Position numbers and translations under genes: made by a program. A DNA stretch of 64,000 nucleotides from Podarcis erhardii. Taxonomy: Eukaryota. Of this stretch, positions 8,391-61,439 are shown piece after piece (positions within the stretch are counted from its first letter, which is position 1; every line of letters begins with the position of its first letter). Below the pieces are notes generated by a model that saw only the letters and a program-made list of their open reading frames with translations, searched no databases and was not told where the DNA came from. The stretch lies in the NCBI GenBank assembly GCA_964252035.1, contig OZ176200.1; one strand, 5' to 3'.

Positions 8391-8393
8391 GTT

Positions 8394-8629
8394 CCAGTTA
8401 CAGATAGGTAGCCGTGTTGGTCTGCCATAGTCAAAACAAAATAAAAAAAATCCAGTAGCACCTTAAAGACCAACTAAGTTAGTTCTTGGTATGAGCTTTC
8501 ATGTGCATGCACACTTCTTCAGATACCTGAAGAATCTGAAGAAGTGTGCATGCACACGAAAGCTCATACCAAGAACTAACTTAGTTGGTCTTTAAGGTGC
8601 TACTGGAAGGATTTTTTTTATTTTGTTTT
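8394..8629. mobile_element. Fold-back Penelope-type hammerhead element, copy A
   Basis: 74-bp inverted arms at 8451-8524 and 8534-8607 with one mismatch and a 9-nt spacer. Pairing extends about 20 bp further. 12-bp TSD TCTTCCCACGTT at 8382-8393 and 8630-8641. Contains CTGAAGA-A-GTGTGCATGCACAY-GAAA-GCTC on both strands. Confidence 0.88.
8488..8527 (-). ncRNA. Minimal type I hammerhead ribozyme motif
   Basis: The minus strand reads GGTAT CTGAAGA A GTGTGC AT GCACAT GAAA GC TC|ATACC. Stem I is GGUAU/AUACC, the core is CUGANGA plus GAAA, stem II is present, stem III is reduced to the palindrome AGCU, and the cleavage triplet is CUC. Activity is untested. Confidence 0.75.
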
Positions 8630-9100
8630 TCTTCCCACGTTGTAATTCCCAACTGGCATTTAGAGGTAGCGCACATAGCTGATACAGGCAGGAGTCCCTG
8701 GTAGCCTTATCTACCAAGAAGGCTCAGAATCATGGCCAAAACTTGATGCCAGTCTCTCCTACCTCTTCCTCAGCCTACACAAAAATAAATATATACAGGC
8801 CATGCAATTCTTTCTGCTGAATTTTAAGTTTTTGAATCATTGGCTTGACTTAAGTGTTTGTGTGTGTGTTTACAAACACCATTCCTGTTTACCATTTGTA
8901 ACAGAGCTACCTTTTTAAATAGCTTACAGAAACCACTTTTCCCCCAGAATAGAAACCTCAAAATCTCCAGTAGTAAGACTTAGTAATGAACTTCCAATAA
9001 TGAGGTTTGGGATAGGGATTAACAGTACAGTTCTAGGCCTGTCTACTCAGAAGTCTTGTTGAATTCAGAGATAACTCCCTGCCAGATAAATATGTATGGG

Positions 9101-9402
9101 TGTTATGTACTGAGTTGAATAGGATCCAAACTGCAGCAGTCTGATTGGTCCTAGAACAATAGGATCCAAATTGCAGCAGTATGATTGGTTGGCAGGAACC
9201 ACCCAATCATGCTCCAGATATAACTGAATCCACAACCTGATTGGCTTACAGTAGAATTCCAGAATTAGCCAATCATGTGCAGCCCATTGTGTAAATAATA
9301 TATATAAAGCAGATACTTTGAGGGGACTTTCATTCATTCCTCCTCACCACTATGAGCTGAATAAAGAGCATGAAATCACTTTGCGACTCTGAGTATATTT
9401 CA
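9101..9402 (+). mobile_element. Solo LTR (probably Gypsy or ERV type)
   Basis: Starts with TG and ends with CA (302 bp). Contains five CCAAT/ATTGG boxes, an internal 40-bp-period duplication, TATATAAA at about 9301 and AATAAA at 9360-9365, in U3-R-U5 order. No clear TSD. Confidence 0.7.
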
Positions 9403-11015
9403 GCATTGTAGTCTTATGGCTAAGCAAATTAACTTGAGGTTCAGGAACACAGCTGCATTATACAGTCTATATCAATTGATTCATCTGGCTCAGTATTGTG
9501 TACACTGGCCGAGGGGGGTGGTGATTCAGGTATGGCACAATTTCCAGTTTAGCCTACAAGGCAGGGGCAGCCCAGTCCATTTTGTCACCTGAGGTGAATC
9601 AGAAATTGCCACCTCCTGTCCCCACTGCTGTCACACCCCCACACACACACTTTCACTGCCACTGAGAGGGGGGCATTCTGGCAGTGGTGGAAGCGGGCAA
9701 AACGCTGCCTCTTGTGCTTCCGCTACCAGAAGCAGGCATTTCATCACATCTCATGGGCAGGCTGGCTCTGCTACAAGGCATTTTACCCAACTGCCCCACA
9801 CCTGGGATCTACATCGTGGGCAGGTGGAGATGTGGCTGTGGTAGCCAGTGAACAATTAGGAGCCTTAAAGTGCATTGTCAATAAACACGTACTCTACCAC
9901 AGAGCCATGGCCCTTACTGATGGTATTGTCAAGATGCAAGCCTCACATGCACACGATTGTGTTTTCAAATTGCTCCCCAGCAGGGCTTTTTTCAGCCAGA
10001 ACTCAGGTCCAGCACCTCTCAGATGGGCGCCTCTAAAATGACAAGAAAACAAGGGGAGTTCATGGAAAGTTCCAATACCTATTTTTCAAGAAAAATAGCA
10101 CTGCTCCCTAGTTTGTGGGTGCTTTACAACATAAGCCTGTGCTTTACTCTGAAGTGAGCTCTACATGGGACAAGTGCCTAGTGAGTAGGAAGTGTAGGTA
10201 AATAACTTATTTAAATCACCTGTCTTTTAGGCACATACATGTAAAGTACCTTCTCGAATAGAACAAATCATTTTAGTGTCACGTAGCACACCCTACATAT
10301 TTTCATTGTAGTCCACCAACTAGATCAAGGAAGTTTGATTTAGTCCCAGATGTCTGTTTGCGGGGACGGAAGCGCAGGGCTGGAAAGCAGGAGTCCTATT
10401 TTTCTCCATTCACACTCAAGATATATAAAACATGACTACACAGTAAACAAATATAACTTCTCAAAAGACAAATATATAGCATAATGGTTATCAGGACTAG
10501 GTGTCATTTTTCAGCCATTTGTAATACGGGTCACATTCAGACCATATATAACACACTAGGATATCACTCTTAAGGGTGCTGAGGGTTGTGAGACCACCGG
10601 TGTTCCCTTGCCAATTTCCTGAGAATAGGGATTGTTAAATCACTGGGAATTATAGTTTTGGGAGGGGATTAGAGGTCTCCAAGAAGTCTCAGCACACTTA
10701 ACAAGTATTACAGTGGTATCAGTGTTTTAAATGTATGGCATGAAGGTGGCCATTCTCTGTGTTTTCTTCTCTATTCAGGCTTGAAACAGTTGCTGCAAAT
10801 GAAACAAGTATCCCAGTGTAGTTGTTTCTTCTGTGTAACCTTTAGCAATGTGGATGATCATTGTGAACTTCAGAAGTGTATCCATGAACATTGAACCACA
10901 GTATTAAGAAGATTCAAAATCACAGAAAGGAGACAGGCTTAAGATGAATGGAAGTGTTGAACATTAGGCAGTTGCACAGGGCAGTTCAACAGGAAATACA
11001 ACCTTCATGGAGATT

Positions 11016-11021
11016 TTTATT
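11016..11021 (-). terminator. Candidate distal CAPRIN1 poly(A) signal AATAAA
   Basis: AATAAA followed about 15-30 nt later by the GU-rich GGTTGTATTTCCTGTTG on the minus strand. Confidence 0.45.
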
Positions 11022-12941
11022 CCTAATGTTTGTTTTTAAAAAGAGTAACAAACTGAAGACAAATACATGACTAATTTGACATTAGTTTCAGAGTTGGATC
11101 TGCAGAGATCAGCCCTATGTATGCAGTTTATAACAGATGGGTGTTGCTACGTTGACACGCTATTCGGCTTGTGCTGCTGCCATTATAGAATTTTGCTTGT
11201 AGAATGGTGCTTAAAAGGGGGGCTTCGTTGACAAAAAAAGGTAGTGAGTAAACATGTTGAGCATGAATTTCCAATAGCCAAAGACTGTAGTATTGGGTAA
11301 GAGTTTACTACTTCCTGAATCAAGGCAAAACAGCATAACAGCAAAGATGCTGCAGAATAAACAGAGGTGGGAATTCAAGCATCTTCGTCATGGTATCGAA
11401 TGAACTGACCATCAGTTCATTTCACTGCAGGTGAAATATTATGCAGCTTCTCTATTCAGGCATTAACACCCTGAAACATGGGTTTCGTTCACATATCCAC
11501 TTTTACATTAACTATAGTGTTGTGAGTGTCTTCTCAATTTAATTAAAATCAGTTCTGGAGCCTAGTTTTAACTAGCATTATCTTTTGAAAACTTTGTACT
11601 TAATAAGCTAGAGTTTTGACTCTTCTGAAAAAGTAGACTTGTGTCTATAGTAATTACTCTGAAGACGGGTGGAGAACCTGTGGCCTTTCCAATGTTGCTC
11701 AGCTCCAACACCTATCAGTCCCAGCCAGCACGCTCAATGCTCAGGAATGATGGGAGTCTCAGGTTTCCTGAAAATACTAGGTGTACCTAATTGCCTGTCT
11801 ACATTTACATTAGAAGTGTAGTCCCATGTCAGATTCCTTTACTATACGCTGAAATTTCACAACTGTGCCAGCAGTGTTATTTAAATATTACCTGACTTTC
11901 ACCCTAAAATTATAGGATGGGTTGTGATTTAAAATACATTTAGAAGTTTTAAAAAACTTATTACAAAAATGCAATCACAAAATTTAGGTGAGAAATTATG
12001 CAACCACATGCTTCTTCTTTGCACACACACCCAGTTGTGTTTAAAACCAGGCTTCCTTCCTTTCTGTGATCTAGGATGCAAATTATCTGTACTGGCAGAA
12101 GTTCATTTGGAAGAAACTGGTGGCGAGATTTCAAGTAAAATCATGATTGCTGGTGATGTCAGTGTGAAAATAATAAAGCTTATAATAATTTAAATTACAT
12201 TGTTTTAATGAAAATCCCAGTTCTCACGCTTTTCCCATACAAGAACTACAAAATAAATGCCTCATTGGGCTGGAGCAGTAAAAGGCAATGGTTCACCAAT
12301 CTGATCTGCAGTCAAAAGTGCAGAATACAGCTGCATAGGCACTAATTTCAATTTCTTCCAGGAACGTCCAAATTAATCACTACTCTCAAATCTCTAATTT
12401 TGAAAATTCACAATATTTGCATAGATATATTATTACAAGCTTGGCTTTGAACAATTCTAACACAACATGCAATTTAATAGTCACATTAGGCAACAGTCAC
12501 AAGAGGGGCAACTTACTATACTTTTAATGTACTACTGTAAGCACCTCTTCCTATCCAAATGAAGTGTGTCATTTTTAAAAATGAAGATTGTACATTAATT
12601 AAAAGAATGCTAAGCTGATTGCAACAGTAAACTTTGTGTGGGTGAAAAGAGATGAAGAACATTACAATGGCAACACCGAAATCACAGAAAAGGCAGGCAA
12701 GGTTTTAAAATGTAATTTCTGTTAAGTGGCAATAGAAACAGGAATGACCCAACACACATTTGAATGTACTGGTGGTATTTAACAAAAAGTAGAATACCAG
12801 AGAAAGATGCAGGGCAAAGCTTTGAAAGTTTTTTTTAACACCAGTGGTATTTTAACATACACTGAAGTTTAGGAATGTAGGCTGCAGTGGAATTTTTTAA
12901 AAATATACATCCAGAGTGTTTGATTCTAAATGTCATTGTTT

Positions 12942-12947
12942 TTTAAT
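12942..12947 (-). terminator. Candidate CAPRIN1 poly(A) signal ATTAAA
   Basis: TTTAAT on the + strand. The minus strand continues ...CTCTGGATGTATATTTTT. Confidence 0.35.
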
Positions 12948-13179
12948 AAAGTCATCAGCTTAAAGGTACTGCAGTTAAAAAACAAGGCGCGAAAACACCA
13001 AGGCAGACAAAACAGTTCCATTCACTTAATGTCTACAGATTTTACACATGAGCACTTTTCCTTAGTCTCATATGCAAATATAACTCCTACATTGCCTTCA
13101 ATATGTATTTGATTTCTGTTAAACTGTTTGCCCCACTTTTAACACCATTCAGATGCAGAAAAAGTAATAGGAGGGACTC

Positions 13180-13480
13180 AAACTGCTTTTCATCTTGACT
13201 TGTGAGAAAGGTCTAGGAGGATGTAGATGAACAGTGAATCAATCATGAAGACTGAACACGGAAATTCTATTTTGATGATAAAGCAGTAACTCTAGAATGG
13301 GCACCACAGACAGACACACCTTTCTTAAAACAATTCACAAAACATCTGTAGATCTCATTACTAGAGACTGTTGTGAAGGGCAGTAGTTTTGCCAGATTAA
13401 AAAGGAATTAGCAAGTGTATTATTGTATCAATATATTAGTTAAGAGCCTGAAGATCATAACTGAACTTTTGGATCCTGAA
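13180..13480 (+). mobile_element. CR1-like 3' fragment, antisense within the extended CAPRIN1 3'UTR
   Basis: Decayed similarity to CR1 3' ends (TTTCTT...CACAA...TTAAAAAGGAATTAGCAAG). Confidence 0.4.
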
Positions 13481-15151
13481 AAATAATGGGAGGAAAACAC
13501 TATGGTTGGCATCTGCCTCTCTCGGGAGAAGCACTATCACATGTCTTTTTGATGGCTGGTCACGGAAGAGGACAGGATTCTAACATACAAAGTGATGATC
13601 TGAATAAGGCAAATAAATACATCTAATACTGCTCCTAAGTTGTTTGAACTGTAGCTTTTCTATCACAAATAGGCCTCTATTAAATAGTACTTCACTTTTT
13701 TCCAAGCTATGAAGGTGGATGACAATTTCCTAATTCAATATAATCATTTAAGATCCAGTGATCATAAAGATTACCACCAGTGAAGTCAAAACATCACCAT
13801 GTTGGTCTCCAACTCAGGGGTTGCATCCAGAAGTGGAACTCTATTAATTGTACACTTCAATGGACAATGGGGAGGTGATGGTTTGATTATTCCTCTTCAT
13901 GCCCAGCAGCCTCCTATGCACCCTGCAAATCTGCTCCAGAGGCTTGGATGACCCTTTGGAACAGAATGGAAGGTAACAATTAAGGAAAGGGGAAATGAAA
14001 ATTCTGTTTCCCTCCCTTTAGCGGAAGCGTCCATTACGGTGATGTCCCATCGGCAAACAAAATAGATACAACCCAATGCCTTCTGGTTATGTTGAGTCAA
14101 TATGGCGAACATAAGGAATCGATAATATTTAGAAGAGTAGAGCTCAACTTTAAGAAGTGTACTTTAGTTTGATTATATTCAAATATAGAAGAGATGAAAC
14201 ACTGAAAAGTTGGCAAAGTAAAACAGTCAACAAATATTCCTCAAATTGGTTTTCCCAATCTTCTCTGAATTATTCCGTAACATTGAATGAGAATCTTAGT
14301 GCTGTGTTTTGTTTTTAAATACAGCAAGGGATTCTGGCCTTTATAGCTACAATATTGGCCCTGAAAGTACAAAAATAGTTGGGTAAAATCTAAGAAGCCA
14401 AAGAGGGAGGTTAGCAGTATTTCCAAAGTATTCAGAATGTATGGCTTGATTGTGTTGCATGGCTCCTTACAGCCAAAGCTTGCAAAAAATTGTGTAAAAT
14501 AACCACAAAGCATGCTATTTGCATAATTCATATTTGCACAGCTTTTCTAGTAAAAATTGGGTGTGTGGTTGTGTGTATAATCACACCACAAATTTCTGCC
14601 TATTTAGTTCCTAAATCTGAACCTTTGGTTTCAGATACTGTACCAACCTGTTAAAAGACTTGCTTAGCTGTATAAAATGGATGGGGGTCACTTTTTAGAA
14701 ATGCAAAAATGCTACTTGTAAGTACTTAGTAATTGCAACCTAGGGCAACCTCAAAGATGAAAGTAGGCAATTCTCATGGTGATAGCTGAAGTCTTTCTCC
14801 TTTCTAGACAAATGGAGGTGGGCACAGATGCTAAGTAATTTAAGAAGAAACCACTACTTGCCAATCAGATTTTAAAAATCTCTTCTCTTTTTCAGTTCAA
14901 TTAACTATATCCATGAAACAAAAACAGTCTTAAAAGGGGATCGGCACCAATACAAAAAGGGCACTGTGCACACAGAATCAGCCTTCTGCAAATATATTCC
15001 CAAATAATTCAGAAACTCTTGTTCAGTGGGTTCCATGGGCTGGACTGCTACATTCAACAGGTGCCATGAATACAATTCTCACTACCAGCTCAAACTTTTA
15101 TGTACAGCTCATGAGATGGCTTGAATGATCAGCTTCAACAGTCTTCAATTT

Positions 15152-15167
15152 GGGGGGGGGGCAGAGA

Positions 15168-15219
<52 letters not shown>

Positions 15220-15239
15220 GAGAGGGAGAGGGAGGGAGA
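15152..15239. repeat. G-run plus (AG)n purine tract; (CT)n in the CAPRIN1 mRNA sense
   Basis: Seen directly: about 88 nt, almost entirely purine on the + strand. Confidence 0.95.
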
Positions 15240-15416
15240 TGACTGCATCTCCTCAGAAGATAAGTTTCAAGACTCCACAGAAGATAATACACCTGAATAT
15301 CTTTGAACGTTAACATTTAAAGTTCTGGGAATGTGCTTCTGAAGTTTCTGTTTCCCTATTACATTTGCAGTAGTCACTTAAGATACGTTAAAGAATACAT
15401 TTTTTTATAAACATGT

Positions 15417-15422
15417 TTTATT
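15417..15422 (-). terminator. Candidate proximal CAPRIN1 poly(A) signal AATAAA
   Basis: TTTATT on the + strand, about 1.1 kb past the stop, followed on the minus strand by U-rich sequence. Confidence 0.5.
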
Positions 15423-16531
15423 TATCTTGCTTAAATCTGTAACTGCTGGCTGTAATTTCCCTTAAAGGGGAAACCGATCCAAACACATACTGGTGCTTTT
15501 CAAAAGAGAGCAATTTAAAAGGGCAGCAGCAGGGATTTGAGATTTCTTAAAACCTTCAGGCTGCAAAATAGAAATAATGTAACCAAAAGTGTTATGAATA
15601 TCCATTAATTCCCATCAGTACCGACATCAGTTATTTGGGGCAATAATACAGCAAGATCAAGTATCAGTGGCAGACAAGGGGGGAAAATAAGGAAAGATAA
15701 GAATACCAATCCTTACAAATGTCATTGCTATCCCAGAAATGTGTTCAGGAGAGAATTCTTTAACACTTCACATTGCAAACAAATGTGGCCATTCAGATTA
15801 CATCTTCTATTTCTTACAGAAAAATTTAAAGTGCCAATCAAAGCCTAATTCTGGGTTTACACAATTATATCAACAGCTACACAAACCAATTAATGCATCC
15901 CTGTCGTCACAGCAAGTCAGGCCTAATAAAAAAAATGCTGTAACTAAGGGTGTGCCCTAAGCTGTCCATCAGCTTATTAGTTGGGGTATAGGCATCATTT
16001 ATTATGCATCACAGATGTTCAGTGCTTCAGTCTAACAGAAAAAGCTGAAATGCAGTTGCTCTGTCAAACCACAATTCGCTTCTTCCATCTTCCTTTCATG
16101 GAAAAGTTTAAATACACCAATTTTCTGAGTAAAACATTTAGGGATTTAGATATTTTTATCCGAATTTGCTGCAGCACTATATAATGTCAATGGAGTCAGT
16201 GGGGTTATTTCTGCCTGTTCAGTTAACTATGGAGATTTTCATAACCCTAAAAACTGCCATTTTTGCTTTTAATCAGAGCAAGGGTAAAAATTCTGGATCT
16301 CATGTGCAAGGCTCAAGATGATGCTTAGGATAGAACATGCAGAGTAAACGTCGTTTCTTTCCATATCCAGGTATAAAGCTGACAACTGTAGTCTTGTCTT
16401 TATGGGCAATGAAAATAATCCCTTTACTATGAACTTCCTATAAAGGAGAACCAAGAGATAACTCTTCTGGAACATGTATGGTACACTGGCCAGTGTGTTT
16501 TTGGCGTTTAAATGTAATCCTGTGAATTAGT

Positions 16532-25817: not shown

Positions 25818-25857
<40 letters not shown>

Positions 25858-47100: not shown

Positions 47101-47976
47101 TGCTGGTTTCTGTCACTGGCTGGGCAGCAGCTGCTCGCCAGGTATTTACTTGGCGACTGTTTTGCAAGGTTTTTTTGTGGGTTGCTTACTGGAAAGCGAA
47201 GGCGGTTGTTTGTGTTGGCACTTGGAAAATATTCAGTATTAACCTAAGTCTCCGTGGTCCTCTGGGCAAAAGTGTGGCACCCATTTCGGAACAGTGATTA
47301 AGTGTACTGGAAGATCTCTAGCGGTTTTGAATTTTCAACATAGGTACGGTCATGGTAACTGGACTTAAATTTATGTATCCTGGGTACGTGGCTGCCTTAG
47401 TAAAACCCTTATATCTAGGGTGGTTGTTGGGTTTTTTTCAAAACATTGCCCTCTGGACTTTGGAGAAGGGATGGTTAACGTATTAGTAAACCAGCATGAT
47501 TTACAGTCGGTGTGGTGGCAGATGCTACTTCTGTAGGCGGAGGTGCCTAATCAAGGTTTCAAATTCTGAATATTTGGGAACTTGCTTTTGGTAAACGATG
47601 AAATAAATAAATCATATCACAGGAAAATTATCTAAAGTGATAGTGGATAATTATTTGTTTTACAAAAGGCTTTATAGAAGTATTCTTTTTGGCAGCCTGT
47701 TGCAACTAGGTGTAGTCACCAAATCCATAGAGGAGGGCCCAAATTTTCCCCCCAGGAAGTTGTGTTCAGGGCCAGTAGTAAAAAAAGTTAAATGAATAAA
47801 AATATGCCTTCTAGGCAGGAAAATGACCAGGATTTTTAAGTCGTGCAGTGAAGGAACTGAGCTGTAGAAACACCCATACTGTGACGACACACCCTGCTAT
47901 TCAGGTTACAACCTGCACATACACAGGCAAACACAATAACTGTGTTTCCCTAGAGTTGCTTTGACATCCCTTGATC

Positions 47977-48387
47977 TTAAATAATAAGTCTATTGAGAAA
48001 GCAAGAAATAGGTTTGATACACCAGGTCAGGAGAGCTCTGACTAAATATCTGCCACTATTGGGCCAGCCACAAAATATATTCCATCTCTCGAACTTAAAA
48101 CTATAGCAACACCCATTTGAGAGAACTTGCTGGTTTTTTATCCACATCTGGGCACCATAATTCCAAACATCGTGAATGCAAGTCTGCAAACGTACAGGTT
48201 GCTTTGTTCTTCTACTTTTTAATTGTAAAATTACATAGAGATCTTTTCTGCAGTTGTGAAGCAGTTCTACAGCGAGGTTCCAAGAGCCGTGGCAAGTATA
48301 GAGGCAAGGGAAGAAGAGAGTTGAAACTCTTAGAAAGCAGCTGTTTGCAATGAAGCAACGCTTTAAAGATTTTGTGAGACAACTCAA
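47977..48387 (-). mobile_element. Possible decayed non-LTR RT C-terminal fragment
   Basis: Only the motif SW...YGAQMWI resembles the LYGAxxW segment that follows LINE RT domains. The clade is undetermined. Confidence 0.3.
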
Positions 48388-51300: not shown

Positions 51301-53799
51301 CAAACATTACAAATTATCTTAACAAGGAAGGGGATTTTTTTTAGTTTTAAAATGCTTTATTTAAAAGTTTTGTTGCCACATTTCTTGAAAGAAAAGGCAA
51401 ACTACTTACTGCAAAAACTTAATATTACAAGGGTTTGCCCTGGATGCCAGTTCTTGGGTCCATTTTTACACATGTAATCTACACCGAAGTGTTGTGGTAA
51501 TGGTGTATTTGAGGTGCAAGCAATTCATACCTTTGACAGTGATTGCGTCAAGTGGGAAAGAAACCTGTGATGAATGAAAGACATGTAGTTGGCACACTTG
51601 CCAGCACCTTCCTTGCAGTATCAGCTTAAAATGCCCCCAACTTTCCCATTGTAACAAAATAATTAATGTTGACATGTGTAAATCCTTGTGCACTCAGATG
51701 AGAACATAACAGATTGAAGTCTAGGTCTTGTGCCTTTGTTTATACTGACCTGCTTATCTTAGACCCGCTTACGCATTTACAATTGTCAACCTCACATAGC
51801 CTCTTCCACGTGACAAAGTTTCATCAGAAACAGAAAAATTAACCACTTCCATGAAATTAGCTGTAACAATATAGTAAAGTTGAAACAGGTACATCAGATA
51901 AAATGGCCCAGTTAAAATGCGATAATCTTGAGCGCACACATTTTCACAGAAATAAAGGAATATTACATCTTTGTGAATACTTTTCTGAACGACAGCATGA
52001 TGATGTCCAGTGTAACCCAGCATAGCACAAAATCATGGCAAGTGGAACCTCAGTGTTCCTTCTGGTGTTGCATAATGTGGTTAGAGGAGAGGCCTTACCC
52101 TTGGCTTATCACTGGCTCCTAGCTTAATCCACTTTACAGGGTTGTTGTGAAGATAAATATAAAGGAAAGGGGAGAGAATCATGTATGCCACTTTGAGCTT
52201 GCTGGGCAAAAGGTGAGATAGAAATGTAAAAAATTAGAAATATATTCCCCTGGAGCTGTTAAAGGTCCCTTTTTACATGAAATTGTAGCCCAGACTTGAC
52301 TCAATAAGGGAGTAAATTTTATGCCATGTACTCAATAAATGTACAGCAACGTGGAGGTTGAGTGCTGGTTTTGTTACTAAGTTTTTTATTTGAATATTTG
52401 TGTGACAAGGCACCAACTTGGCAACTGTTTACAAAATTCTACTGTACCAAATACCGTAGGTTTCTCATTCCATCTTTTGGACTACCTTGGGACTGATGTA
52501 TGTGAATTAAAAAGCCTTCCTACCGCCAATAGCTCTAGAAAGATTTCCATTCTTTTCTATTTCTAAAGGCAGGCCAGCTGTGTGGGAGAGAATTTTAGAA
52601 GTCAGCCACTGAAGCACATGAATAAATTTAATAATTTAGCTCATTGCTATGAAATGGCAGCTAGGAATGTCCTAACGTTCACACATGCACAGTGATGATA
52701 GGAAGGAAAAAGACTATAATCCACCAGACTCAGTAGCTAGTCAGTTAATTCATACTTTTTCCATGCACACCAACTAGCTTTTGCTGCAAAGTATCAAAAT
52801 ACGAACATGATGCTTTATGTCTTTTGTAAGTCTATATTGTGCCATGAAAACAACTTTGAATTTCTCTTCCCAGAGTATGAATAAGTGTAACCACAGTATA
52901 AAGCTCTGGTTCCCATTGAAGCCAGGGATTCTTAGCATATATAATTTGTTCTATGGCTGCATTAACCACATGCCGGGCCGAGTCTAAACACAGAAGAAGT
53001 CTAGTCTTTGCAAAAGTGGAGGCAATTCACAAAGACTTCAGAGAGCAATAAAACAACACAAGAGTTTGTAGCTTTTAAACTGTTAATTGTTTTATTTAAT
53101 GGTTTAAAAAGATTTGTAGAATGAAGAAATGCTCTCACAGTCAAACTCAAGAGATGTGCCAGCTATTAATCATCCCTAAAACAATAAGGGCATTTGTTAT
53201 TACTGTCTACTGCCTGTTCTCAGCTTTAATCTGTCTTTTGAGTTTGACGCTGCCAGATTTTCAGAAGTGGGTCACCCAGTTCTCTCTGGACCCTGTTTTT
53301 CTGCTGAGCAGTTAAAATTAGCATTTTCTATTATGCTGCTGGAGATTTTGGAAAGATATTGAGAGTGAACTTAGTCACATTTTCCTGAACTCCCCCCACC
53401 CCACCCCAATTTCTGGTAATGAAAAAAACCCCAGTTCATAGATAGGGATAAGAAAAACCTCGTGTACTCAAAGAAATGCCTTGTATGACCAGTAGGGATA
53501 GAGGAGAAATCCAGTTCAATTTGCATTTAAAGGTGAACCTACTTAATTTGCCATTTCCAAACAATACAAGTAATGAAACACAGCGTAGCCCATAAACCAG
53601 ATGGATGTATAGTTTGATCACTCAGCAGCTCACCCCATCTCATTCTTGATATAGTTCAGTGCTCAGCTGACATTCACAGCTTTTGTAAGTAGCACTAGTT
53701 TTGGGGGATGCACATGACATCACATTTGGCCAAAGAGTGAAACTCTGAAGTCTGTCTTAGCAGCACCAAAATCTGACAGTTCTGCAGCAAGTGAAATTG

Positions 53800-55100
53800 A
53801 CAAGCACAACATGGTGGAAACCAAAGGCAGGAAAACCATCAGAAACTCCTCCAGAACTATGTTGCTGACCTGGCAGCAGATATCAACCAATTGTATCTAG
53901 ATCTTACAAAGGATTGTCAGAATGCCCTTAAACCTCTTGAATTTTCCTTTAATGATCTTCCAGCAAAAGTAGCTGACATTTCCAAAATGGCGGATGAAGC
54001 CTTGAAATTTGACTTCCATCCCCAAAACCCACATGCAGACAGGTTAGCTGAACAAATCAGCAGGTTTGGCTGGAAGATTAACTGGATCGCAGTCACAGAC
54101 AGGATCACAGTCTTAAGAGGGGTCCTGCGCAACATTGCAACCCCTCCCTTCACTTCCTATCTCTTCCTGCACTTTTAAATGTGTGGCACATCCTTTGTGG
54201 AGCCCGTGCTGTTGGTCTGGAATAAGATGGACTCATAAGCTAGCTCCTCAGTGACTATCTTAACTTTAAGTAGCACCTTAAAGACCAACTGAGTTAGTTC
54301 TAGGTATGAGCTTTCGTGTGCATGCACACTTCTTCAGAAGTGTGCATGCACACGAAAGCTCATACCTAGAACTAACTCAGTTGGTCTTTAAGGTGCTACT
54401 GGAAGGAATTTTTTTATTTTGTTTTGACCATGGCAGACCAACACGGCTACCTATCTGTATCTTAACTTTAAGCATCCTGACAAGTATAAGCAATTAGTGG
54501 ATCGTGGACAAAAGGGACAACTTATGATGGAGGATTTCTGTGATTAGGAGCAAGCCCATTTCCCCTTTAAAACTGTGGCAGCTCCTTTATGGGACAAGAG
54601 TTAATTGGGTTCCAATATTTCAAATAACTTTTTGTGCACAGTCAGTTTATAGATCTGAGCAGCTGCCACACCCATTAACTATTTACAAAAACCCCCAAAA
54701 CTCTGCAAACTGGGCTCTAAGGGGCAGAAGGGTTTTATCTATCTTTTACAAACTCTTACTAGATCTTAAATGTGGAGCAGGGTTCTCCACACGCAAATCT
54801 TGGGGAAAAGACCTCAGCACTTTATTCAGTGATGCTGATTGGGATCATCCATGGGGCAGCTCTCGCCTTAAAGCAACTTCAGCTCTTACATGGGAGGGTG
54901 TGTCGAAACTGATTTATTGTTGGCACTTAACCGCAGTCAGGCTCAGCTATTTCCCTCATTCACTTTCACCAAAATGCTGGTGAGTTGTGAAACTCATGGG
55001 TCATATTTGCACCTGCAGTGAGAGTGTGAAAAGGTGAGGGGCTTCTGGCTTAACCTGCCCAGTCACATAAAAAAAGTTTATCAACCAAACAAATGTCCCC
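53800..55100 (+). mobile_element. Internally deleted L1/Tx1-type LINE relic interrupted by hammerhead element B
   Basis: 54540-55060 encodes LSIFYKLLL...KSWGKDL...DWDHPW...KLIYCWHLTAVRLSYFPHSLSPKCW, then (frameshifted) SCETHGSYLHL.ECEKVRGFW, typical of the non-mammalian L1 ORF2 C-terminus and its Cys/His motif. 53800-54178 is a coiled-coil-like open frame, possibly ORF1 (weaker evidence). Confidence 0.7.
54271..54457. mobile_element. Fold-back Penelope-type hammerhead element, copy B
   Basis: Perfect 65-bp inverted repeat at 54269-54333 and 54336-54400 with a 2-nt spacer. Direct repeat TATCTTAACTTTAAG at 54256-54270 and 54458-54472 (TSD up to 15 bp). The right arm continues with the same terminus as copy A (GGCAGACCAACACGGCTACCTATCTG). 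Confidence 0.88.
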
Positions 55101-56086
55101 AAATAGACTTTAGCTTTCCTTTCCATCTTCCTTAAAAAGTGGTACAACAGACTTGGCAACTAACAGGAACAGAGAAAGGCATGGGGTTAAGGAATCAAAA
55201 CTGATAAATCTATAACAGTCTGATATCATTTTTTGTTAATAACGATAAACCAACTGAAAGGGTACAGCACCAAGCCTTTCTCTTGTTTTGATCTGACATC
55301 TGGCCTACATCTCATTTCTCTAGTAACCCAACTGTAATAGGAGTGGCATAAAACCTTGCCTCCACCCCCCACCCTTATTGTAAAGGATGACACCATTGTT
55401 ATACGCTGATTGCTCCATTTATTGATAATGATATTTTTTAAAAATAAAAATGCTAGAACACAGCTGTACTTCAAAATTGACACCTCTCTAAACTTCACAA
55501 CCCAATTCTGTGACCAAACATTTACAAAGATGTATATATTAGAGGGAAATGTGCCTAATAATATTGGTGAAAATAACATACCAAAATGCGTTATATTAGG
55601 GGAAATTGCTTGCAAAAATGTGTACATTAGTCAAAGTTGCATAGTGAAATGTGTTTATTAGAATTTCACACTAAAATGCAAATCACATTTTAGGAGTATT
55701 TTTTTAAAAAAGCACGAATTGATGCAGAATGTGGAGAACTAAATTTACGATTGGAAAAATGAGAATCTGACCGAACAAGAATTGATAGATCTGTCCATCT
55801 CTAATGGCCAGTGACGGGAACAAGTATAATTCTAAACCTTGACATCATTAGTTGGCATAAGTAAACGGTTCTTACATTGCACTATATGTTACTGCTTTTG
55901 TTCTTAAACCATGCACATTCACACACAGCCTGTACTTCCTACGGTAACTAAGCTCTGTTTAGCTGCCCTTGTAGTAAATAAATTGAAGGAATTAAAAAGT
56001 AATTTCACCCCAAAGCAATCAACTCAATTGCTTGTATCCGGTTTAATTTAAATAGGAAGAAACAGACAATATATTCTGCCTATCTG

Positions 56087-56099
56087 CCACTAGAGGGTG
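56087..56099 (+). promoter_or_regulatory. Candidate CTCF site
   Basis: (TG)CCACTAGAGGGTG, one mismatch to the core consensus. Confidence 0.4.
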
Positions 56100-56356
56100 A
56101 GAGCTCTGTGAGGAAAATAATTGAACATTATAACTAACCTATTCAAAGGCTAATGAATTTTCATTTCAGGAGAAATATTGGCCCATGACCTTGAGAACTG
56201 TTAAAGACAGTTGCTGGCAGCTAAGCTTCAGAATATTCAGCAGCAATATAGTGTACTTTTCATCGGTTTGCAAGCTGACTTTTAGTTTTCGTTATTTTAG
56301 TATGAATGATAGGTAGAGCCAGACAAATTTTCCTCTTCCTAGCTACATACAAGATG

Positions 56357-56609
56357 CAGTGGTGCCTCGCAAGATGAAAATAATTTGTTCCACGAGTCGC
56401 TTCGTCTTGCGATTTTTTCGTCTTGCGGAGCGCGGATTCCCCGGGTATTAACGGTTTTACGAAAAAGGAAGCAAACTCGCCAGATGTTTTCATCTTGCGA
56501 AGCAAGCCCATAGGGAAATTCGTCTTACGAAGCACCTCGAAAAACCGAAAAACCTTTCGTCTAGCGAGTTTTTCGTCTTGCGAGGCATTCGTCTTGCGGG
56601 GCACCACTG
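56357..56609. mobile_element. Tc1/mariner-type MITE
   Basis: TIRs CAGTGGTGCCTCGCAAGA / TCTTGCGGGGCACCACTG with repeated TCGTCTTGCG subunits. Flanked by TG on both sides. Confidence 0.8.
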
Positions 56610-57149
56610 TGTCTTGAAAGCCTTTTGCTCTCAAGTGTTTGCTTGACATTCATAATGTTTGCTTGGAATCAATAATTTCATTATCTTGTGTCTAGTTCCA
56701 AAGTACAGTAAAGAATATTTGGAAGTCATTGGCATAATTTTATACTAAGTTTCCGGTTCTTGTATCCTGGACAATTTGACTTCAGTTATATTCGGAGATT
56801 GAAAATATGCTGCATATGTAACATGTGGCTTTTCTTTAATCTCTTAGAAACATTGAAACGGGAACTCCAGCTAATGAATGGTTCGTGGGACTCCTTAGGG
56901 ACTCTTCTATCTTGTGTAAAATTCCACAAGTGTTTAGGCTACTGTGTGGAAGTGATCAATGAGCATTTAAAGCCAAGATGAGGGGACTTCAGTCTTACAT
57001 GATCTGCTTTGAAAGCACTCCAGCCATGATCCTCTGATGCATTTTAAAATTCTCAGCCTACTCAGGTTTTCCTGAGCCAGTTAAGGAATAACCACTGTGT
57101 GCTAAGACATCCTGATTAAGCACTCTTTGCTTAACAATGAAATAGCTTG

Positions 57150-57340
57150 CTAGATCTGATCAAGATCCATCTCATCCAGCATAGGAAGCTGCCTTATACT
57201 GAGACTTCAATGTCAGTATTGTCCACTCTGGCTGGTAGCAGTGCTGCAGGTGTTCAGACAGAGCCTACCTGGGGATGACAATGAGAGTATCTAGAACCGC
57301 TCACTTGCCACTCATCTGTCCTACCAATGAGCTACCGTTC
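57150..57340 (-). mobile_element. tRNA-derived SINE, decayed
   Basis: The reverse complement contains GGTAGCTCATTGG at the head and CAATACTGA...AGTATAAGGCAGCTTCCTATG at the tail, like 5335-5515. Confidence 0.55.
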
Positions 57341-57707
57341 TTCCCCAAGGCATACTTTGCAGGAATCCTAGCAACGAGCAGGTGCTAAATGGTCCATGGC
57401 TGCTGGGTTTAAAGTGTCATATCCTTATGTCCTAACTGCACTTGGCACAGTGTATTTGCCGTTTAATTCAATAATTTTCAATGACAGTCTTGTTGAAAAT
57501 GGCCCTTGATTGCAGATAGGCCTTGAGTTAAATAATGAGGGACACTAAGTAAATGTAAACAACTTGTTTTGTGCCACCATGTTGTCTTTCCTCTTTGAAA
57601 TGCTATAATCAGCTTAGTGAAAGCAGCTGGTAGTACTGTGCCTCATTAATGAAATGAGCAGGGAGCTCATTTATTCTCCAGCTAAATCCAATGTTTTTTT
57701 CTAGTGG

Positions 57708-57720
57708 CCTCCAGGTGGCA
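57708..57720 (+). promoter_or_regulatory. Candidate CTCF site
   Basis: (TGG)CCTCCAGGTGGCA(C), one common variant position. Confidence 0.5.
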
Positions 57721-58756
57721 CCAGTGCTTAAATGATAAAATCAGGCGTTGACCTTCAGAAAACATGGCATCTTTGTTTTGAGGTTCTCTGTGTCGCAATT
57801 GGATGTGGCTTGCGACCAAGCGACAACTTTCACACAAATGAAACTTTGTCCAGATCACGGGAGGCGGCTCCTCCTCACATCTGGCTCATAGATCAGCTTG
57901 TTTCTAAAAATACATTGTGCGCTCAGTTTGATGTCCTGGGAGTGCGGTAACTCTGCAGCATGCGGCTTTGAACATTTGCCTTATTAAGTGTTGCATCCAA
58001 TTGGTGTCCCGCTGCTCTTTGATACATCTAAACCTTCCGATGTGTTAATACTAAGGCCATTCCCTCTACACATCCCCCTCCCCCAATTAGATTTGCAGAG
58101 AGCTATTTCAGTCAGTTTGAACTTCCGGAGTACAGTGTACAAGGCTAAATTCAAGGTTCTAAAATGCACAAAGAAGTCACCTTGAGTCCCCTTTTCAAAA
58201 GGTCATGTAAATTAGTCTCTGTTTTTGATTCTGTCCCTCTGCAGATGGTTCAAATCTGCAGATAGTCAAGTGCTTTGTATCCAAGTCATTTGAAATCACA
58301 ATGCAGTGTGCTTGGACCATCTTAAGGCCTTGATTTTGTTGCATGTGGCAGCTTTTCTGGAAAAATAATTGTTTTCGTGTTGACCCTTGGAAACCAGTGT
58401 GGGCCTAAATGGGTAGAACCCTCTTCTGGAGAACCTTTAGAACTGAACAATGCTCCTGCAGAACCACCTTCCAGAGCCATCCATCTAAATATGAGTGGAA
58501 CTGCCGCAAAGTTGTGCCTCCAATACCCAACTCAGAGTTACCCTACAAGGATACCCTGGTCAAAGGTATCAAAAGTTGCTGAGATTAAGGCCTGAATGCT
58601 GATAGAAATGGTTTTTAAAAATGGATAACTGCCAAGCCACATACATTTTCCCCATATCATAGTACAGTCTGCGTATGCCTGTTTTGCTGAAACACATTCT
58701 TACATCTCACCACACAAGTAGAGGTTAGGGTAGTAGAGCTCAACATCAAATGTGTC

Positions 58757-58905
58757 CAGTGCTTTTTTTATATAAGAAAAAGTGTTTAGGGGTTCTCTCA
58801 TTTTCCTACTCATGTTGAAATACTGCCCCTCAATGAGGCCAAACTTAGATTCACAAAATGTTTAGGGGTAGGCATACCCCTGCGTCCCCCCAGAAAAAAG
58901 CACTG
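58757..58905. mobile_element. hAT MITE
   Basis: TIR CAGTGCTTTTTT / AAAAAAGCACTG with an 8-bp TSD AATGTGTC (58749-58756 and 58906-58913). Confidence 0.85.
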
Positions 58906-59072
58906 AATGTGTCTATAGAATTAGGTCCCGTCTACACGATACATTTAAAACAGTATCACACCACTTTAAATGATAATGGCTACACTTCTCCAAGTGGTTA
59001 AACAATCAGTCCCTCTCCCCTGGGAACTCTGGGAACTGTATGCTTGTGGGAGAAGTAGGGATCTCCTAACAG

Positions 59073-59207
59073 CAGGCATAGGCAAACTTGGCCCTCCAGA
59101 TGTTTGGGGACTACAACTCCCATCATCCCTAGCTAACAGACCAGTGGTCAGGGATGATGGGAGTTGTAGTCCCAAAACATCTGGAGGGCCGAGTTTGCCT
59201 ATGCCTG
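59073..59207. mobile_element. Palindromic hAT MITE nested in an older MITE (about 58925-59314)
   Basis: Near-perfect fold-back CAGGCATAGGCAAAC...GTTTGCCTATGCCTG with an 8-bp TSD CCTAACAG (59065-59072 and 59208-59215). Confidence 0.88.
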
Positions 59208-59968
59208 CCTAACAGCTCTCAGCAGCCTTAACTAACTACAATCCCCATACTTCTTTGAGGGAAGTCATGAGTGAAGTGGTATAATACCACTTTAAATGTA
59301 GAGTACAGGTGGGGTTTTAGTTTGTCCAGCTTCTGTTTTGTCGCTGCAAGGGGAGAAAGTGTCCTCTTCTTTGTTCAGAACAACAACATGATAACTGCTT
59401 TTTTGGATCCCACTTCAGTTGGTATTGTTTTAGAAACTCCTCTTTTCATGGTAAGTGTTTGTGTGTTGAGAGTGATAATGACAGGAGGGTTGGGAGAAAT
59501 GCCACTCCCAGTCTGACCACAAAGTCTTTTCCTTTCCTTCGCTGTTTTCTTATCCTCACTGCTGGGGTGGCAGGATGTATGGGAGGAGGGATAGCTGTTG
59601 TCTCATTATCATGGTGCTGCAGATAATAAACATGCTGACACCATGTGGATGCCTTTCACAAAAGCTGTCCTTCAGTCAGTTAGCAATTTCTGTGCCATGT
59701 GCATGACTGTAAGCAGGATTGTGCTTGTCTTCTTTCTACACATGTGGGACTGAATGTGAGACGGCACAGAAACTAGTATGGAATTCGTAGAATCTCATCT
59801 GTTTTATTTAATCAATTTGTTTAATCAACACAGATGAGGGAGATCGTTTTGAAATTGTGCATTTGGTGTTTGCAAATACTGTACTGCTAAAGTATTTGGA
59901 GGTGTCTCCTTGTGTGTCCTACATGGCCATCTCTTCCCATGCCAAACCACCTGAAAAGTTCATGCTTT

Positions 59969-60126
59969 CATAGAATTATAGAATTGTAGAGTTGGAAGGG
60001 ACCCTGAGGGTCATCTAGTCCAACCCCCTGCAATGCAGGAATCTTGCCCACAGCCATCTCTGAGTGGGCTTGAACCACTGACCTTCTGGTTAAGAGCCAA
60101 ACACACTGACCCACTGTGCCACCTGA
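59969..60126 (-). mobile_element. tRNA-headed SINE with a CR1-type 3' tail
   Basis: Minus strand: A box TGGCACAGTGG and B box GGTTCAAGCCC, then GGGTTGGACTAGATGACC...CCCTTCCAACTCTAC and an (ATTCTATR)n tail typical of CR1 3' ends. Confidence 0.75.
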
Positions 60127-60140
60127 GAGTTTTTCCAGAG

Positions 60141-60462
60141 CAGGGGTAGGCAACCAAAGCCCGTGGGCTGGATGCAGCCCAATCGCCTTCTCAGTCTGGC
60201 CCGTGGACAGTCCAGGAATCAGCGTGTTTTTACATGAGTAGAATGTGTCCTTTTATTTAAAACGCATCTCTGGATTATTTGTGGGGCCTGCCTGGTGTTT
60301 TTACATGAGTAGTATGTGTGCCTTTATTTAAAATGCATCTCTGGGTTATTTCTGGGGCATAGGGATTCGTTCATTTCCCCCTCCCCCAAATATAGTTTGG
60401 CCCACCACATGGTCTGAGGGATGGTGGACCGGTCCACGGCTGAAAAAGGTTGCTAACCCCTG
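60141..60462. mobile_element. hAT (Charlie-like) MITE
   Basis: CAGGGGTAGGCAACC...GGTTGCTAACCCCTG with an 8-bp TSD TTCCAGAG (60133-60140 and 60463-60470). Confidence 0.88.
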
Positions 60463-60780
60463 TTCCAGAGGATGTGGGATTTAAGACATGCAAAAAAGCT
60501 GGAACCCAGCTGTTTTCATTTCAAAGACATGAAGATAAAGGAGCAACACAGATCAAAAGGAAAAAAATATTATGTATGGCGAGATCAACCTCTTCATCCA
60601 TCACTGATCTTTAGTGTCATCCATTGCATTTATTTATTGCAGGGGAAATCAACCTGGTACCCTTCTGATCTTGAAGTCCAATCCCCATCAAGTCCAGCAA
60701 CATCTATAGGTCACCCAGTTGTTCATTCCTGGTTTATTGTATTTATATTTCAGCTTTCTCTCACTGAGTCCAAGGCAGTA

Positions 60781-61022
60781 CAGTGGCACCTCGGATTAAG
60801 AACTTAATTCGTTCCAGAGGTCCATTCTTTACCTGAAACTGTTCTTAAACTGAGGTACCACTTTAGCAAATGGGGCCTCCTGCTGCTGCCAAGCCGCTGC
60901 CGCATGATTTCTGTTCTCATCCTGAAGCAAAGTTCTTAACCTGAGGTACTATTTCTGGGTTAGCGGAGTCTGTAACCTGAAGCATCTGTAACCTGAAGTG
61001 TCTGTAACCCGAGGTACCACAG
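60781..61022. mobile_element. Tc1/mariner MITE, inverted copy of the 36292-36522 family
   Basis: TA-CAGTGGCACCTCGG...CCGAGGTACCACAG-TA. The interior is the reverse complement of 36292-36522. Confidence 0.85.
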
Positions 61023-61173
61023 TATGTCCTGGGTTCCCATGAAGTTTTCCACCCAGGCACACTAAGCAGGCTTGAACTGCCTTAGAGAGAGATTTTCAGT
61101 GTTAAGCCAACAATAGACTTCTAATGGCTAATTTTGAAGGCCATATAACGTGCACCTATTTCCCTTTGAAATA

Positions 61174-61439
61174 AATTAAATAAATAAAAAAATGTCCAGT
61201 AGCACCTTAGAGACCAACTAAGTTTGTTCTGGGTATAAGCTTTCATGTACATGCACACTTCTTCAGATACAGTGTGCATGCACACTTCTTCAGATTCTTT
61301 GGTATCTGCAGAAGGGGGCATGCACACGAAAGCTTATACCCAGAACAAACTTAGTTGGTCTCTAAGGTGCTACTGGACAATTTTTTAATTTTTTAATTTA
61401 TTTTGACTGCGTCAGACCAACACAGCTACCCACCGGAAT
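61174..61439. mobile_element. Fold-back Penelope-type hammerhead element, copy C (different subfamily)
   Basis: Inverted arms at about 61193-61270 and 61302-61379, with an extra internal core copy at 61272-61295. TSD CTATTTCCCTTTG at 61156-61168 and 61440-61452, extending to AAATA with one indel. Confidence 0.85.
61233..61270 (-). ncRNA. Minimal type I hammerhead ribozyme motif
   Basis: The minus strand reads GTAT CTGAAGA A GTGTGC AT GTACAT GAAA GC TT|ATAC. The core is intact, stem I is 4 bp, and stem II has G-U wobbles. Confidence 0.6.

What the first reader, a model, noticed from the sequence alone, without database searches (positions are those of the whole stretch)
8394..61439. Family of short, TSD-flanked fold-back retroelements made of two head-to-head hammerhead ribozyme modules (3 copies in 64 kb)
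Seen: three elements (8394-8629, 54271-54457, 61174-61439) share one plan, a complete arm (hammerhead, spacer, ...CAGACCAACACRGCTACC terminus) joined head-to-head to a truncated inverted arm. Each is flanked by its own 12-15 bp direct repeat, and none has coding sequence. Established: Penelope-like elements (PLEs) carry minimal type I hammerheads with a palindromic stem III in their pseudo-LTRs, and they often insert with an inverted, truncated end. Inference: these are either extreme truncations of a PLE or a self-standing non-autonomous ribozyme-SINE/retrozyme-like family mobilised by PLE RT. Three independent copies in 64 kb, in at least two subfamilies, suggest a very high genomic copy number. 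Whether such a discrete short family is described in this lineage I cannot tell.
Basis: partly seen in the sequence, partly recalled or inferred. Interest (0 to 1): 0.82.

Follow-up and report, generated by a model that had tools for sequence, protein, structure and literature searches.

The report
Mini palindromic Penelope retrotransposon insertions
Three short mirror-image DNA insertions are real and carry hammerhead ribozyme motifs, but they are most likely heavily shortened copies of the tail end of a very abundant Penelope-like jumping gene, a known insertion pattern for this class and not a new kind of mobile element.

Summary
Three elements share one plan: E1 at 8394-8629, E2 at 54271-54459 and E3 at 61169-61439. 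Each has one arm running from a minimal type-I hammerhead motif to a CAGACCAACACRGCTACC terminus, joined head-to-head to an inverted arm truncated at its outer end. Each is flanked by its own 12-13 bp direct repeat (up to 15 bp in E2), and none has an ORF. A contig from a related organism joins 8381 directly to 8630. E1 is therefore a real, recent insertion with a 12-bp target duplication.

Two corrections apply. Only two of the six arms carry a complete hammerhead, and Rfam recognises none.

The arm has the same layout as the module defined biochemically for the Anolis Penelope-like element PAc. In PAc a hammerhead is followed about 80 nt later by an AC-rich stem-loop where reverse transcription starts internally, with an optional tail. 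An adjacent inverted 5'-truncated copy is a published hallmark of this class.

Contigs from other runs show more than 10,000 pieces of the family per genome and many different inner junctions. This suggests the second arm is made at each insertion.

The retrozyme, SINE and MITE definitions each fail a tested feature. I cannot exclude a self-propagating non-autonomous family (about 0.2). This scan has reported the same family repeatedly on other DNA of this genome.

Verdict: new member of a known kind, low to moderate interest.

The parts
8382..8393 (.). E1 left target-site duplication, TCTTCCCACGTT
   Evidence: Exact 12-bp repeat of 8630-8641. A relative's contig joins 8381 to 8630 and keeps one copy (record 17).
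8394..8535 (-). E1 full arm, read on the minus strand: about 11-nt leader, hammerhead, about 78-nt spacer, AC-rich stem-loop, short tail
   Evidence: nhmmer E=2e-42.
8394..8426 (-). E1 3' terminus: AC-rich stem-loop GGCAGACCAACACGGCTACC (8407-8426) plus 13-nt tail TATCTGTAACTGG (8394-8406). This is the presumed reverse-transcription start region.
   Evidence: The small stem-loop appears in the folds. The position and CAACAC motif parallel the PAc RT start at nt 111-118. Contigs of other copies become heterogeneous right after ...CAGACCAACAC, or end at 8391-8396 (table 7).
8488..8527 (-). Complete minimal type-I hammerhead motif: GGUAU / CUGAAGA / A / GUGUGCAUGCACAU / GAAA / GCUC then AUACC. 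The predicted cut lies between 8493 and 8492. The 10.1-11.1 pair is G-U in this copy.
   Evidence: Descriptor hit, with 0 hits in 200 simulations. No Rfam hit.
8534..8629 (+). E1 inverted arm. It starts at AUCUGAAG and its outer end is truncated in the T-rich tract just before GAC. It shares the AT at 8534-8535 with the full arm.
   Evidence: It is 98.9% identical to the full arm, with one CpG transition and one 4-nt indel.
8630..8641 (.). E1 right target-site duplication
54258..54270 (.). E2 left target-site duplication, TCTTAACTTTAAG (15 bp if the ambiguous TA is included)
54271..54337 (-). E2 inverted arm. Its inner end is at C3 of CUGAAGA and its outer end is truncated at GGTGCTA.
   Evidence: It is 100% identical to the full arm over 62 nt.
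54336..54459 (+). E2 full arm. It is 5'-truncated inside the hammerhead core, starting at AGAAGUG, and ends ...CAGACCAACACGGCTACCTATCTGTA.
54460..54472 (.). E2 right target-site duplication
61156..61168 (.). E3 left target-site duplication, CTATTTCCCTTTG
61169..61270 (-). E3 inverted arm. It carries a complete hammerhead motif at 61233-61270(-). Its outer end is truncated in the same T-rich tract as in E1.
61271..61295 (-). Reiterated 25-nt tip of the inverted arm (AUCUGAAGAAGUGUGCAUGCACACU), a second copy of the 5' half of the hammerhead
   Evidence: nhmmer hit at 61272-61295, E=2.6e-4; alignment.
61294..61439 (+). E3 full arm of the older subfamily. The core is mutated to CUGCAGA and the arm ends ...CAGACCAACACAGCTACCCACCGGAAT. 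Its junction to the inverted piece is the same as in E1, with a shared AT.
61440..61452 (.). E3 right target-site duplication

Best explanation
The three elements are dead-on-arrival mini-insertions made by the reverse transcriptase/endonuclease of an abundant, recently active Penelope-like element (PLE). Earlier notes of this scan call the host genome a lizard; I did not verify that.

Proposed steps:
1. Reverse transcription starts internally on the element's RNA, at the AC-rich stem-loop (CAGACCAACAC...) or some 20 nt further on (the tail). This is inferred by analogy with PAc.
2. It copies only about 100-130 nt, to a point at or just upstream of the hammerhead. That point is either the RNA's 5' end or an early stop. 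This is inferred.
3. The cDNA end then continues on antisense DNA. Either the cDNA snaps back on itself, or it pairs with a second cDNA primed on the other target strand. Pairing uses about 2 nt of microhomology: AT in E1 and E3, AG in E2. This creates the inverted second arm. The junctions are shown; the mechanism is inferred.
4. The staggered target cut leaves a 12-13 bp duplication (up to 15 bp in E2). This is shown, and for E1 it is confirmed by an empty site.

The hammerhead is carried as cargo of the PLE terminal module. In a transcript of a whole mini-element it would be locked in a hairpin of about 95 bp.
For: 1. The arm layout matches the module mapped biochemically in Anolis PAc. There the hammerhead is followed by RT initiation in an AC-rich stem-loop about 85 nt after the cut site, with an optional tail between two start sites. 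PAc also cleaves and extends both target strands. Here CCAACAC lies 77-83 nt after the predicted cut and is followed by an 8-13 nt variable tail.
2. The literature describes high 5' truncation, an adjacent inverted 5'-truncated copy and a tail as typical of PLE insertions.
3. [quoted passage not shown]
4. The two arms of one element are closer to each other than to other elements (100%, 98.9% and 92.2%). They share subfamily-specific variants, so both arms were born from one template event.
5. Contigs from two other organisms show many joints. One side is fixed at the hammerhead's 5' edge (8526 or 8534). The other side is variable (8413-8480, or 8583-8603). These are many different inner junctions, which suggests the inverted arm is made anew at each insertion (table 5).
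6. E1 is absent from the orthologous site in organism B, so the family was recently active.
7. The elements hold no sequence beyond the terminal module, and no ORF.
Against: 1. No ORF-bearing copy with this terminal module could be examined here. The link to an autonomous PLE rests on motif and layout, and on unverified earlier notes.
2. Unlike PAc, the module is non-coding in all frames, so the analogy crosses families.
3. The outer end of the inverted arm is not at the canonical start site. In E1 and E3 it falls at the same T-rich position, which neither the snap-back nor the two-strand model predicts outright.
4. E1 and E3, from different subfamilies, share an identical inner junction. That could instead mean descent from a fold-back master.
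5. All run data were contigs. Depths, RNA starts and RNA ends could not be read.
Confidence: 0.72

Rival explanations
1. A self-standing non-autonomous family, retrozyme- or SINE-like. Short hammerhead-bearing units, or short masters, are themselves transcribed and repeatedly mobilised in trans by PLE reverse transcriptase.
For: Copy number is very high and 5' ends cluster next to the ribozyme. The loose-end consensus upstream of 8534 agrees over only about 9-12 nt in the DNA runs. All three copies in this window are short. E1 and E3 share the same inner junction. A 2026 preprint argues that vertebrate non-LTR retrozymes, found in 4 of 5 reptiles sampled, are non-autonomous derivatives of PLE pLTRs.
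Against: The copies are inverted rather than tandem, so double self-cleavage to a monomer or a circle is impossible. There is no pol III head, and T-runs lie within the arm before the terminus. The elements have no family-specific body sequence. The inner junctions in other copies are highly variable. In PAc the RNA needed for insertion extends about 55 nt beyond the RT start, and the copies lack that part. A copy that begins at a transcription start carries no upstream promoter.
Confidence: 0.2
2. A fold-back master that is inherited. The inverted-repeat structure is part of the source element and is copied as such, with variable 5' truncation of the outer arm.
For: The junction is identical in E1 and E3 (ATTCTTY... 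joined to CTGAAGAAG with a shared AT). In all three elements the truncated arm lies on the 5' side of the full arm, as expected for 5' truncation of a hairpin template.
Against: The E2 junction differs: it is spacer-less and cuts into the core. E3 has an extra reiterated tip. Contigs from other genomes show dozens of different inner junctions. A template RNA forming a hairpin of about 95 bp (-157 kcal/mol) would be a poor RT template. The shared junction is also explained by a fixed RNA end plus AT microhomology.
Confidence: 0.05
3. A MITE or fold-back DNA transposon unrelated to reverse transcription, or an assembly artefact of a palindrome.
For: Long inverted repeats flanked by direct repeats look superficially like MITEs. 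Palindromes are prone to assembly errors.
Against: The termini are asymmetric, because one arm extends 35-60 nt further, to a specific terminus. The duplications vary in length and sequence. The motif and layout are PLE-like. The structures recur in thousands of contigs from independent runs and organisms, and run X1 holds 92% of the locus words.
Confidence: 0.03

Closest known systems
Poseidon_Ac (PAc), the Penelope-like element of Anolis carolinensis (Frangieh et al. 2024, PMC11167929)
   Same: A minimal type-I hammerhead at the head of the terminal module. An AC-rich stem-loop with CAACAC lies about 80 nt after the cut site and marks the 3' end of genomic copies. There is an optional short tail. 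Copies are 5'-truncated. Cleavage and extension of both target strands gives a route to inverted arms.
   Different: The sequence is unrelated apart from the core motifs. In PAc helix II holds the ORF start and the module is coding, whereas here all frames carry stops. The tail here is about 20 nt against about 34 nt. The TSDs here are not notably AT-rich: flank GC is 0.40-0.51 against 0.41 for the window.
Canonical PLE insertion architecture (Evgen'ev & Arkhipova 2005; Craig et al. 2021, PMC8557442)
   Same: High 5' truncation, an inverted 5'-truncated copy abutting the 5' end, a tail at one end, and variable target duplications.
   Different: The described cases centre on ORF-bearing units with pLTRs. 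Here the whole insertion is only 190-270 bp, essentially the hammerhead-to-RT-start module plus its mirror image.
PLE minimal hammerheads (Cervera & de la Pena 2014, PMC4209133; Lunse et al. 2017, the latter from my own knowledge)
   Same: The CUGANGA/GAAA core, a bulged nucleotide after A9, a long helix II, and helix III replaced by a palindromic AGCU that would need a second copy to form.
   Different: Helix II is itself a perfect 14-nt palindrome. In silico, two copies prefer an intermolecular helix II duplex. Activity is untested.
Metazoan non-LTR retrozymes (Cervera & de la Pena 2020, PMC7229834; Li et al. 2026 preprint, 10.64898/2026.07.22.740005)
   Same: Short, non-coding, hammerhead-bearing, related to PLE terminal regions, with TSDs longer than 4 bp and high copy number.
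   Different: Retrozymes are direct tandem repeats with one sense ribozyme per unit, and they yield circRNAs. These elements are inverted pairs with at most one sense ribozyme per strand.

Membership tests
PLE-type minimal hammerhead (min-HHR) | Conserved core CUGANGA ... GAAA with H17, in type-I topology (helix I open) | tested here: met
   Met at 8488-8527(-) and 61233-61270(-), with 0 hits in 200 simulated windows. The other four arms are partial or mutated.
PLE-type minimal hammerhead (min-HHR) | [quoted passage not shown] | tested here: met
   The extra A is present. G-C is present in the E1 +, E2 and E3 + arms, and is G-U in the two arms that pass the descriptor. AGCU is a palindrome.
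PLE-type minimal hammerhead (min-HHR) | Match to curated hammerhead covariance models | tested here: not met
   No Hammerhead family hit at gathering or at E<=10. This may reflect the missing helix III of minimal variants, so it weighs little.
PLE-type minimal hammerhead (min-HHR) | Self-cleavage | not testable with these tools
   Only contigs were available, with no raw RNA reads.
Penelope-like element insertion (EN+ PLE) | RT plus GIY-YIG ORF | tested here: not met
   There is no ORF in the elements. The nine window ORFs of at least 130 aa have no Pfam hit. The elements are therefore fragments or derivatives, not full members.
Penelope-like element insertion (EN+ PLE) | 5' truncation with an adjacent inverted 5'-truncated copy, and variable TSD | tested here: met
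Penelope-like element insertion (EN+ PLE) | 3' end at an internal AC-rich RT start with an optional tail | tested here: inconclusive
   The stem-loop and variable tail are present, and other copies diverge after CAGACCAACAC or at 8391-8396. RT initiation itself was not testable.
Metazoan non-LTR retrozyme | Direct tandem repeats, each with a sense type-I hammerhead | tested here: not met
   The arms are inverted and no direct tandem copies exist in the window.
Metazoan non-LTR retrozyme | Expression as small circRNAs | not testable with these tools
   No raw RNA reads were available.
SINE | Pol III-type head (tRNA, 7SL or 5S) | tested here: not met
   There is no tRNA, 7SL or 5S match within the elements. 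Runs of T inside the arm lie upstream of the terminus.
MITE / fold-back DNA transposon | Symmetric terminal inverted repeats and a fixed-length TSD | tested here: not met
   One arm is 35-60 nt longer and has a unique terminus. The TSDs are 12, 13(-15) and 13 bp, with unrelated sequences.

The most novel reading that the evidence does not exclude
The hammerhead-to-RT-start module may be the unit that this PLE lineage preferentially copies, as run-off from an RNA 5' end at the ribozyme. Obligatory template switching at that end would then seed tens of thousands of near-perfect 60-100 bp hairpin loci. Their transcripts would feed small-RNA silencing of the element. Alternatively, the mini-palindromes could themselves be a propagating non-autonomous lineage.
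Probability: 0.1. Interest if true: 0.6.

Novelty: new member of a known kind. Interest (0 to 1): 0.3.

Why it matters
The copies give clean natural examples of how Penelope-like elements finish integration. That step is still undefined experimentally. Three features are informative:
- The 3' end sits at an AC-rich stem-loop, as in the one PLE studied in vitro.
- The 5' ends lie at the ribozyme.
- The inner junctions show about 2 nt of microhomology, and one copy has a reiterated tip.

A census of such junctions in this genome could distinguish snap-back synthesis from two-strand priming. E1 is also a young insertion about 140 bp from a candidate NAT10 first exon and is absent in a related organism, so it could serve as a marker or affect that promoter. 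None of this changes the classification, which is an ordinary product of a known element class.

Tried and rejected
- Rfam at gathering threshold on the whole window, and at E<=10 on E1 and E3, gave no hammerhead family. It returned only generic long-hairpin matches to miRNA precursor models well below their thresholds. I reject these as a consequence of the inverted repeat.
- Two exact-pattern scans of metagenome contigs for conserved 23-25-mers of the arm found no loci. No extra copies or ORF-linked copies could be fetched.
- Pfam on the nine window ORFs of at least 130 aa found nothing. I did not search the window with the PAc protein, because that would have meant typing a long sequence.
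- A full-text search for four sequence strings of the element found no paper.
- The look-up of sequencing runs returned only Logan contigs, and no run on record as RNA. Depth figures are sums over contigs and I do not use them as copy numbers.
- The search of earlier findings by sequence and by a long word list came back blank.
- In E2 the frame reading through the arm is open, but E1 and E3 have TAG at the same place. I treat the open frame as chance.
- A simple 8-bp snap-back hairpin (UUCUUCAG/CUGAAGAA) predicts a junction ...CTGAAGAA|GTGTGC. The observed junction is ...CTGAAGAAT|CTGAAGAAG, so I reject this hairpin as the primer.
Full report
**What is there.** The three stretches were read directly. 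A BLAST of the 128-nt arm of E2 against the window, and an nhmmer profile of the six arms, both find exactly three inverted pairs. They also find one 25-nt extra piece inside E3, and nothing else in 64 kb.

Aligned in the sense orientation, the arm reads as follows:
- a short leader (ATTCTTYRG),
- GTAT,
- CTGAAGA, then A,
- GTGTGCATGCACAC,
- GAAA,
- GCTC, then ATACC,
- about 70 nt that includes a T-rich tract,
- GGCAGACCAACACRGCTACC,
- 8-13 variable bases.

One arm per element reaches that terminus. The other arm is inverted, abuts it head-to-head, and stops short at its outer end. In E1 and E3 it stops in the T-rich tract, at the same position within 1-2 nt. In E2 it stops at GGTGCTA.

**Boundaries and target duplications.**

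| Element | Coordinates | Length | Direct repeat | Repeat positions |
|---|---|---|---|---|
| E1 | 8394-8629 | 236 bp | TCTTCCCACGTT | 8382-8393 / 8630-8641 |
| E2 | 54271-54459 | 189 bp | TCTTAACTTTAAG | 54258-54270 / 54460-54472 |
| E3 | 61169-61439 | 271 bp | CTATTTCCCTTTG | 61156-61168 / 61440-61452 |

For E1 the duplication is not just a pattern. A 3,644-nt contig of run X4 (organism B) covers 8150-8381 and continues without a break at 8630-8880, so it lacks the element and one repeat copy (table 8, record 17). Two low-depth contigs of runs X15 and X17 (organisms F and H, guessed to be RNA) appear to bridge the same empty site. Their depth is identical on both flanks, and the laid pieces begin at 8641 and 8630, at record positions 67 and 65. 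E1 is therefore a recent insertion.

**The ribozyme motif.** Rfam finds no hammerhead at gathering or at E<=10. It reports only generic hairpin hits to miRNA models far below threshold, which is what any long inverted repeat gives.

I therefore wrote a descriptor following the published minimal PLE hammerhead. It requires helix I, CUGANGA, an optional bulge, helix II, GAAA, a palindromic A..U in place of helix III, and H17. It hits 8488-8527(-) and 61233-61270(-), and hits nothing in 200 simulated windows.

The motif shows the traits that Cervera & de la Pena list as non-random. [quoted passage not shown]

The other four arms are incomplete:
- the E1 + arm has 2 bp of helix I,
- both E2 arms lack the 5' strand of helix I,
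- the E2 full arm starts inside the core,
- the E3 + arm reads CUGCAGA.

The two modules lie on opposite strands. An RNA of a whole element would fold into a hairpin of about 95 bp (-157 kcal/mol for E1), not into a ribozyme.

**What it corresponds to.** Frangieh et al. 2024 studied the Anolis PLE PAc in vitro. They report:
- a minimal hammerhead at the pLTR/ORF junction;
- reverse transcription that starts internally, in an AC-rich stem-loop 111-118 nt into the ORF, about 85 nt after the ribozyme cut;
- a second start about 34 nt away, which defines the optional tail of genomic copies;
- a need for RNA downstream of the start site, up to +172;
- cleavage and extension of both target strands.

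In the PAc consensus, nt 111-118 read ACAACACA. In the present arms CCAACAC lies 77-83 nt after the predicted cut, inside a small stem-loop, and is followed by the variable 8-13 nt. In contigs of other copies the consensus after ...GGCAGACCAACAC becomes heterogeneous. Other copies run to 8391-8396 (table 7). This is the pattern expected for two alternative ends.

The arm is thus the hammerhead-to-RT-start module of a PLE, although of a different family from PAc. The sequences are unrelated outside the motifs. Here all reading frames carry stops, whereas the PAc module is coding.

Craig et al. 2021 list high 5' truncation, an adjacent inverted 5'-truncated copy and a tail at one end as typical of PLE insertions.

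**How the second arm arises.** Within an element the arms are 100% (E2), 98.9% (E1) and 92.2% (E3) identical. They share subfamily variants, while E3 differs from E1/E2 by about 7-13%. Both arms therefore come from one event.

In E1 and E3 the junction is the same. The full arm begins ATTCTTY... and the inverted piece begins (AT)CTGAAGAAG, so AT is shared (8534-8535; 61294-61295). In E2 the full arm begins at AGAAGTG and the inverted arm at CTGAAGAAG, and AG is shared. E3 also repeats the first about 25 nt of the inverted arm (61271-61295).

Contigs of organisms B and E show many joints with one side fixed at the ribozyme's 5' edge (8526 or 8534). The other side lies anywhere between 8413-8480 or 8583-8603 (table 5). 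I read this as template switching from a more or less fixed cDNA end onto antisense DNA at variable positions, made anew at each insertion. The antisense DNA could be the same cDNA folding back, or a second cDNA primed on the other strand.

A simple 8-bp self-hairpin does not give the observed junction. The non-canonical outer end of the inverted arm is explained by neither variant. That step remains inference.

**Abundance and 5' ends.** 10,343 contigs (X4) and 18,190 contigs (X9) lie on the element at 85% likeness or more. Flank contigs have depth 14 in X4. The tool warns that summed depths are not copy numbers, so I use them only to say the family is very abundant. Three copies in 64 kb point the same way.

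The best-supported loose end on the right arm is at 8534 in all four runs. That position is forced by E1's own junction. The informative part is that the upstream consensus agrees over only about 9-12 letters (...CTsTTTCAGTGT) in the DNA runs, with overall agreement 0.41-0.42. Agreement is better (0.60-0.62) in the two putative RNA runs. This suggests that most genomic copies end within about a dozen bases upstream of the ribozyme. A fixed RNA 5' end explains this without invoking a separate family.

**Why not a retrozyme, SINE or MITE.**
- Retrozymes are direct tandem repeats with one sense ribozyme per unit, and they give circRNAs. These copies are inverted.
- There is no pol III head, and T-runs precede the terminus.
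- The termini are asymmetric and the duplications vary, unlike MITEs.
- The elements contain nothing beyond the PLE terminal module. By analogy with PAc they lack the RNA 3' of the RT start that a new round needs.

A self-propagating lineage is not excluded (about 0.2). I could not examine ORF-bearing copies or build a tree of genomic copies.

**Novelty.** The components are published: minimal hammerheads in PLEs, inverted truncated copies, internal RT initiation with a tail, and pLTR-derived non-autonomous repeats. This scan has already noted the same family many times on other DNA of this genome. One search lists 154 notes that hold the words hammerhead and Penelope. One search includes a follow-up that calls a 200-bp palindrome a typical PLE scar.

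The new details here are the E1 empty site, the identical AT junction in two subfamilies, and the reiterated tip. I rate the finding a new member of a known kind.

**Limits.**
- The organism names were coded. "Lizard" comes from earlier notes and was not verified.
- All run data were contigs.

Noticed in passing
window 8318-8381 and 8630-8773: Low-depth contigs of two runs guessed to be RNA (X15, X17; organisms F and H) seem to span the E1 empty site. The E1 target may therefore lie in a transcribed promoter or 5' region. E1 is absent in organism B and apparently in F and H.
   Followed up: partly
window 8300-8349: A stretch of about 50 bp just left of E1 has summed contig depth of about 2,200 (X4) and about 13,000 (X9), against about 14 for single-copy flank. 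This is another moderately repeated sequence abutting the insertion site.
   Followed up: no
window 60056-60128 (-): An Rfam tRNA match (44.2 bits, E=4e-6) lies about 1 kb from E3. It could be a tRNA gene or the head of a tRNA-derived SINE.
   Followed up: no
window 8496-8509 and equivalents in all arms: Helix II of the hammerhead (GUGUGCAUGCACAC) is itself a perfect 14-nt palindrome. In RNAcofold, two copies prefer an intermolecular helix II duplex (-34.2 kcal/mol) over the helix III dimer expected for PLE ribozymes.
   Followed up: partly
window 8516-8537 (-), leader plus core: The leader UUCUUCAG can pair with CUGAAGAA of the catalytic core as an 8-bp hairpin with a GUAU loop in E1. The pairing is weaker in E3 and in the consensus of other copies. 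This alternative fold would mask the core.
   Followed up: no
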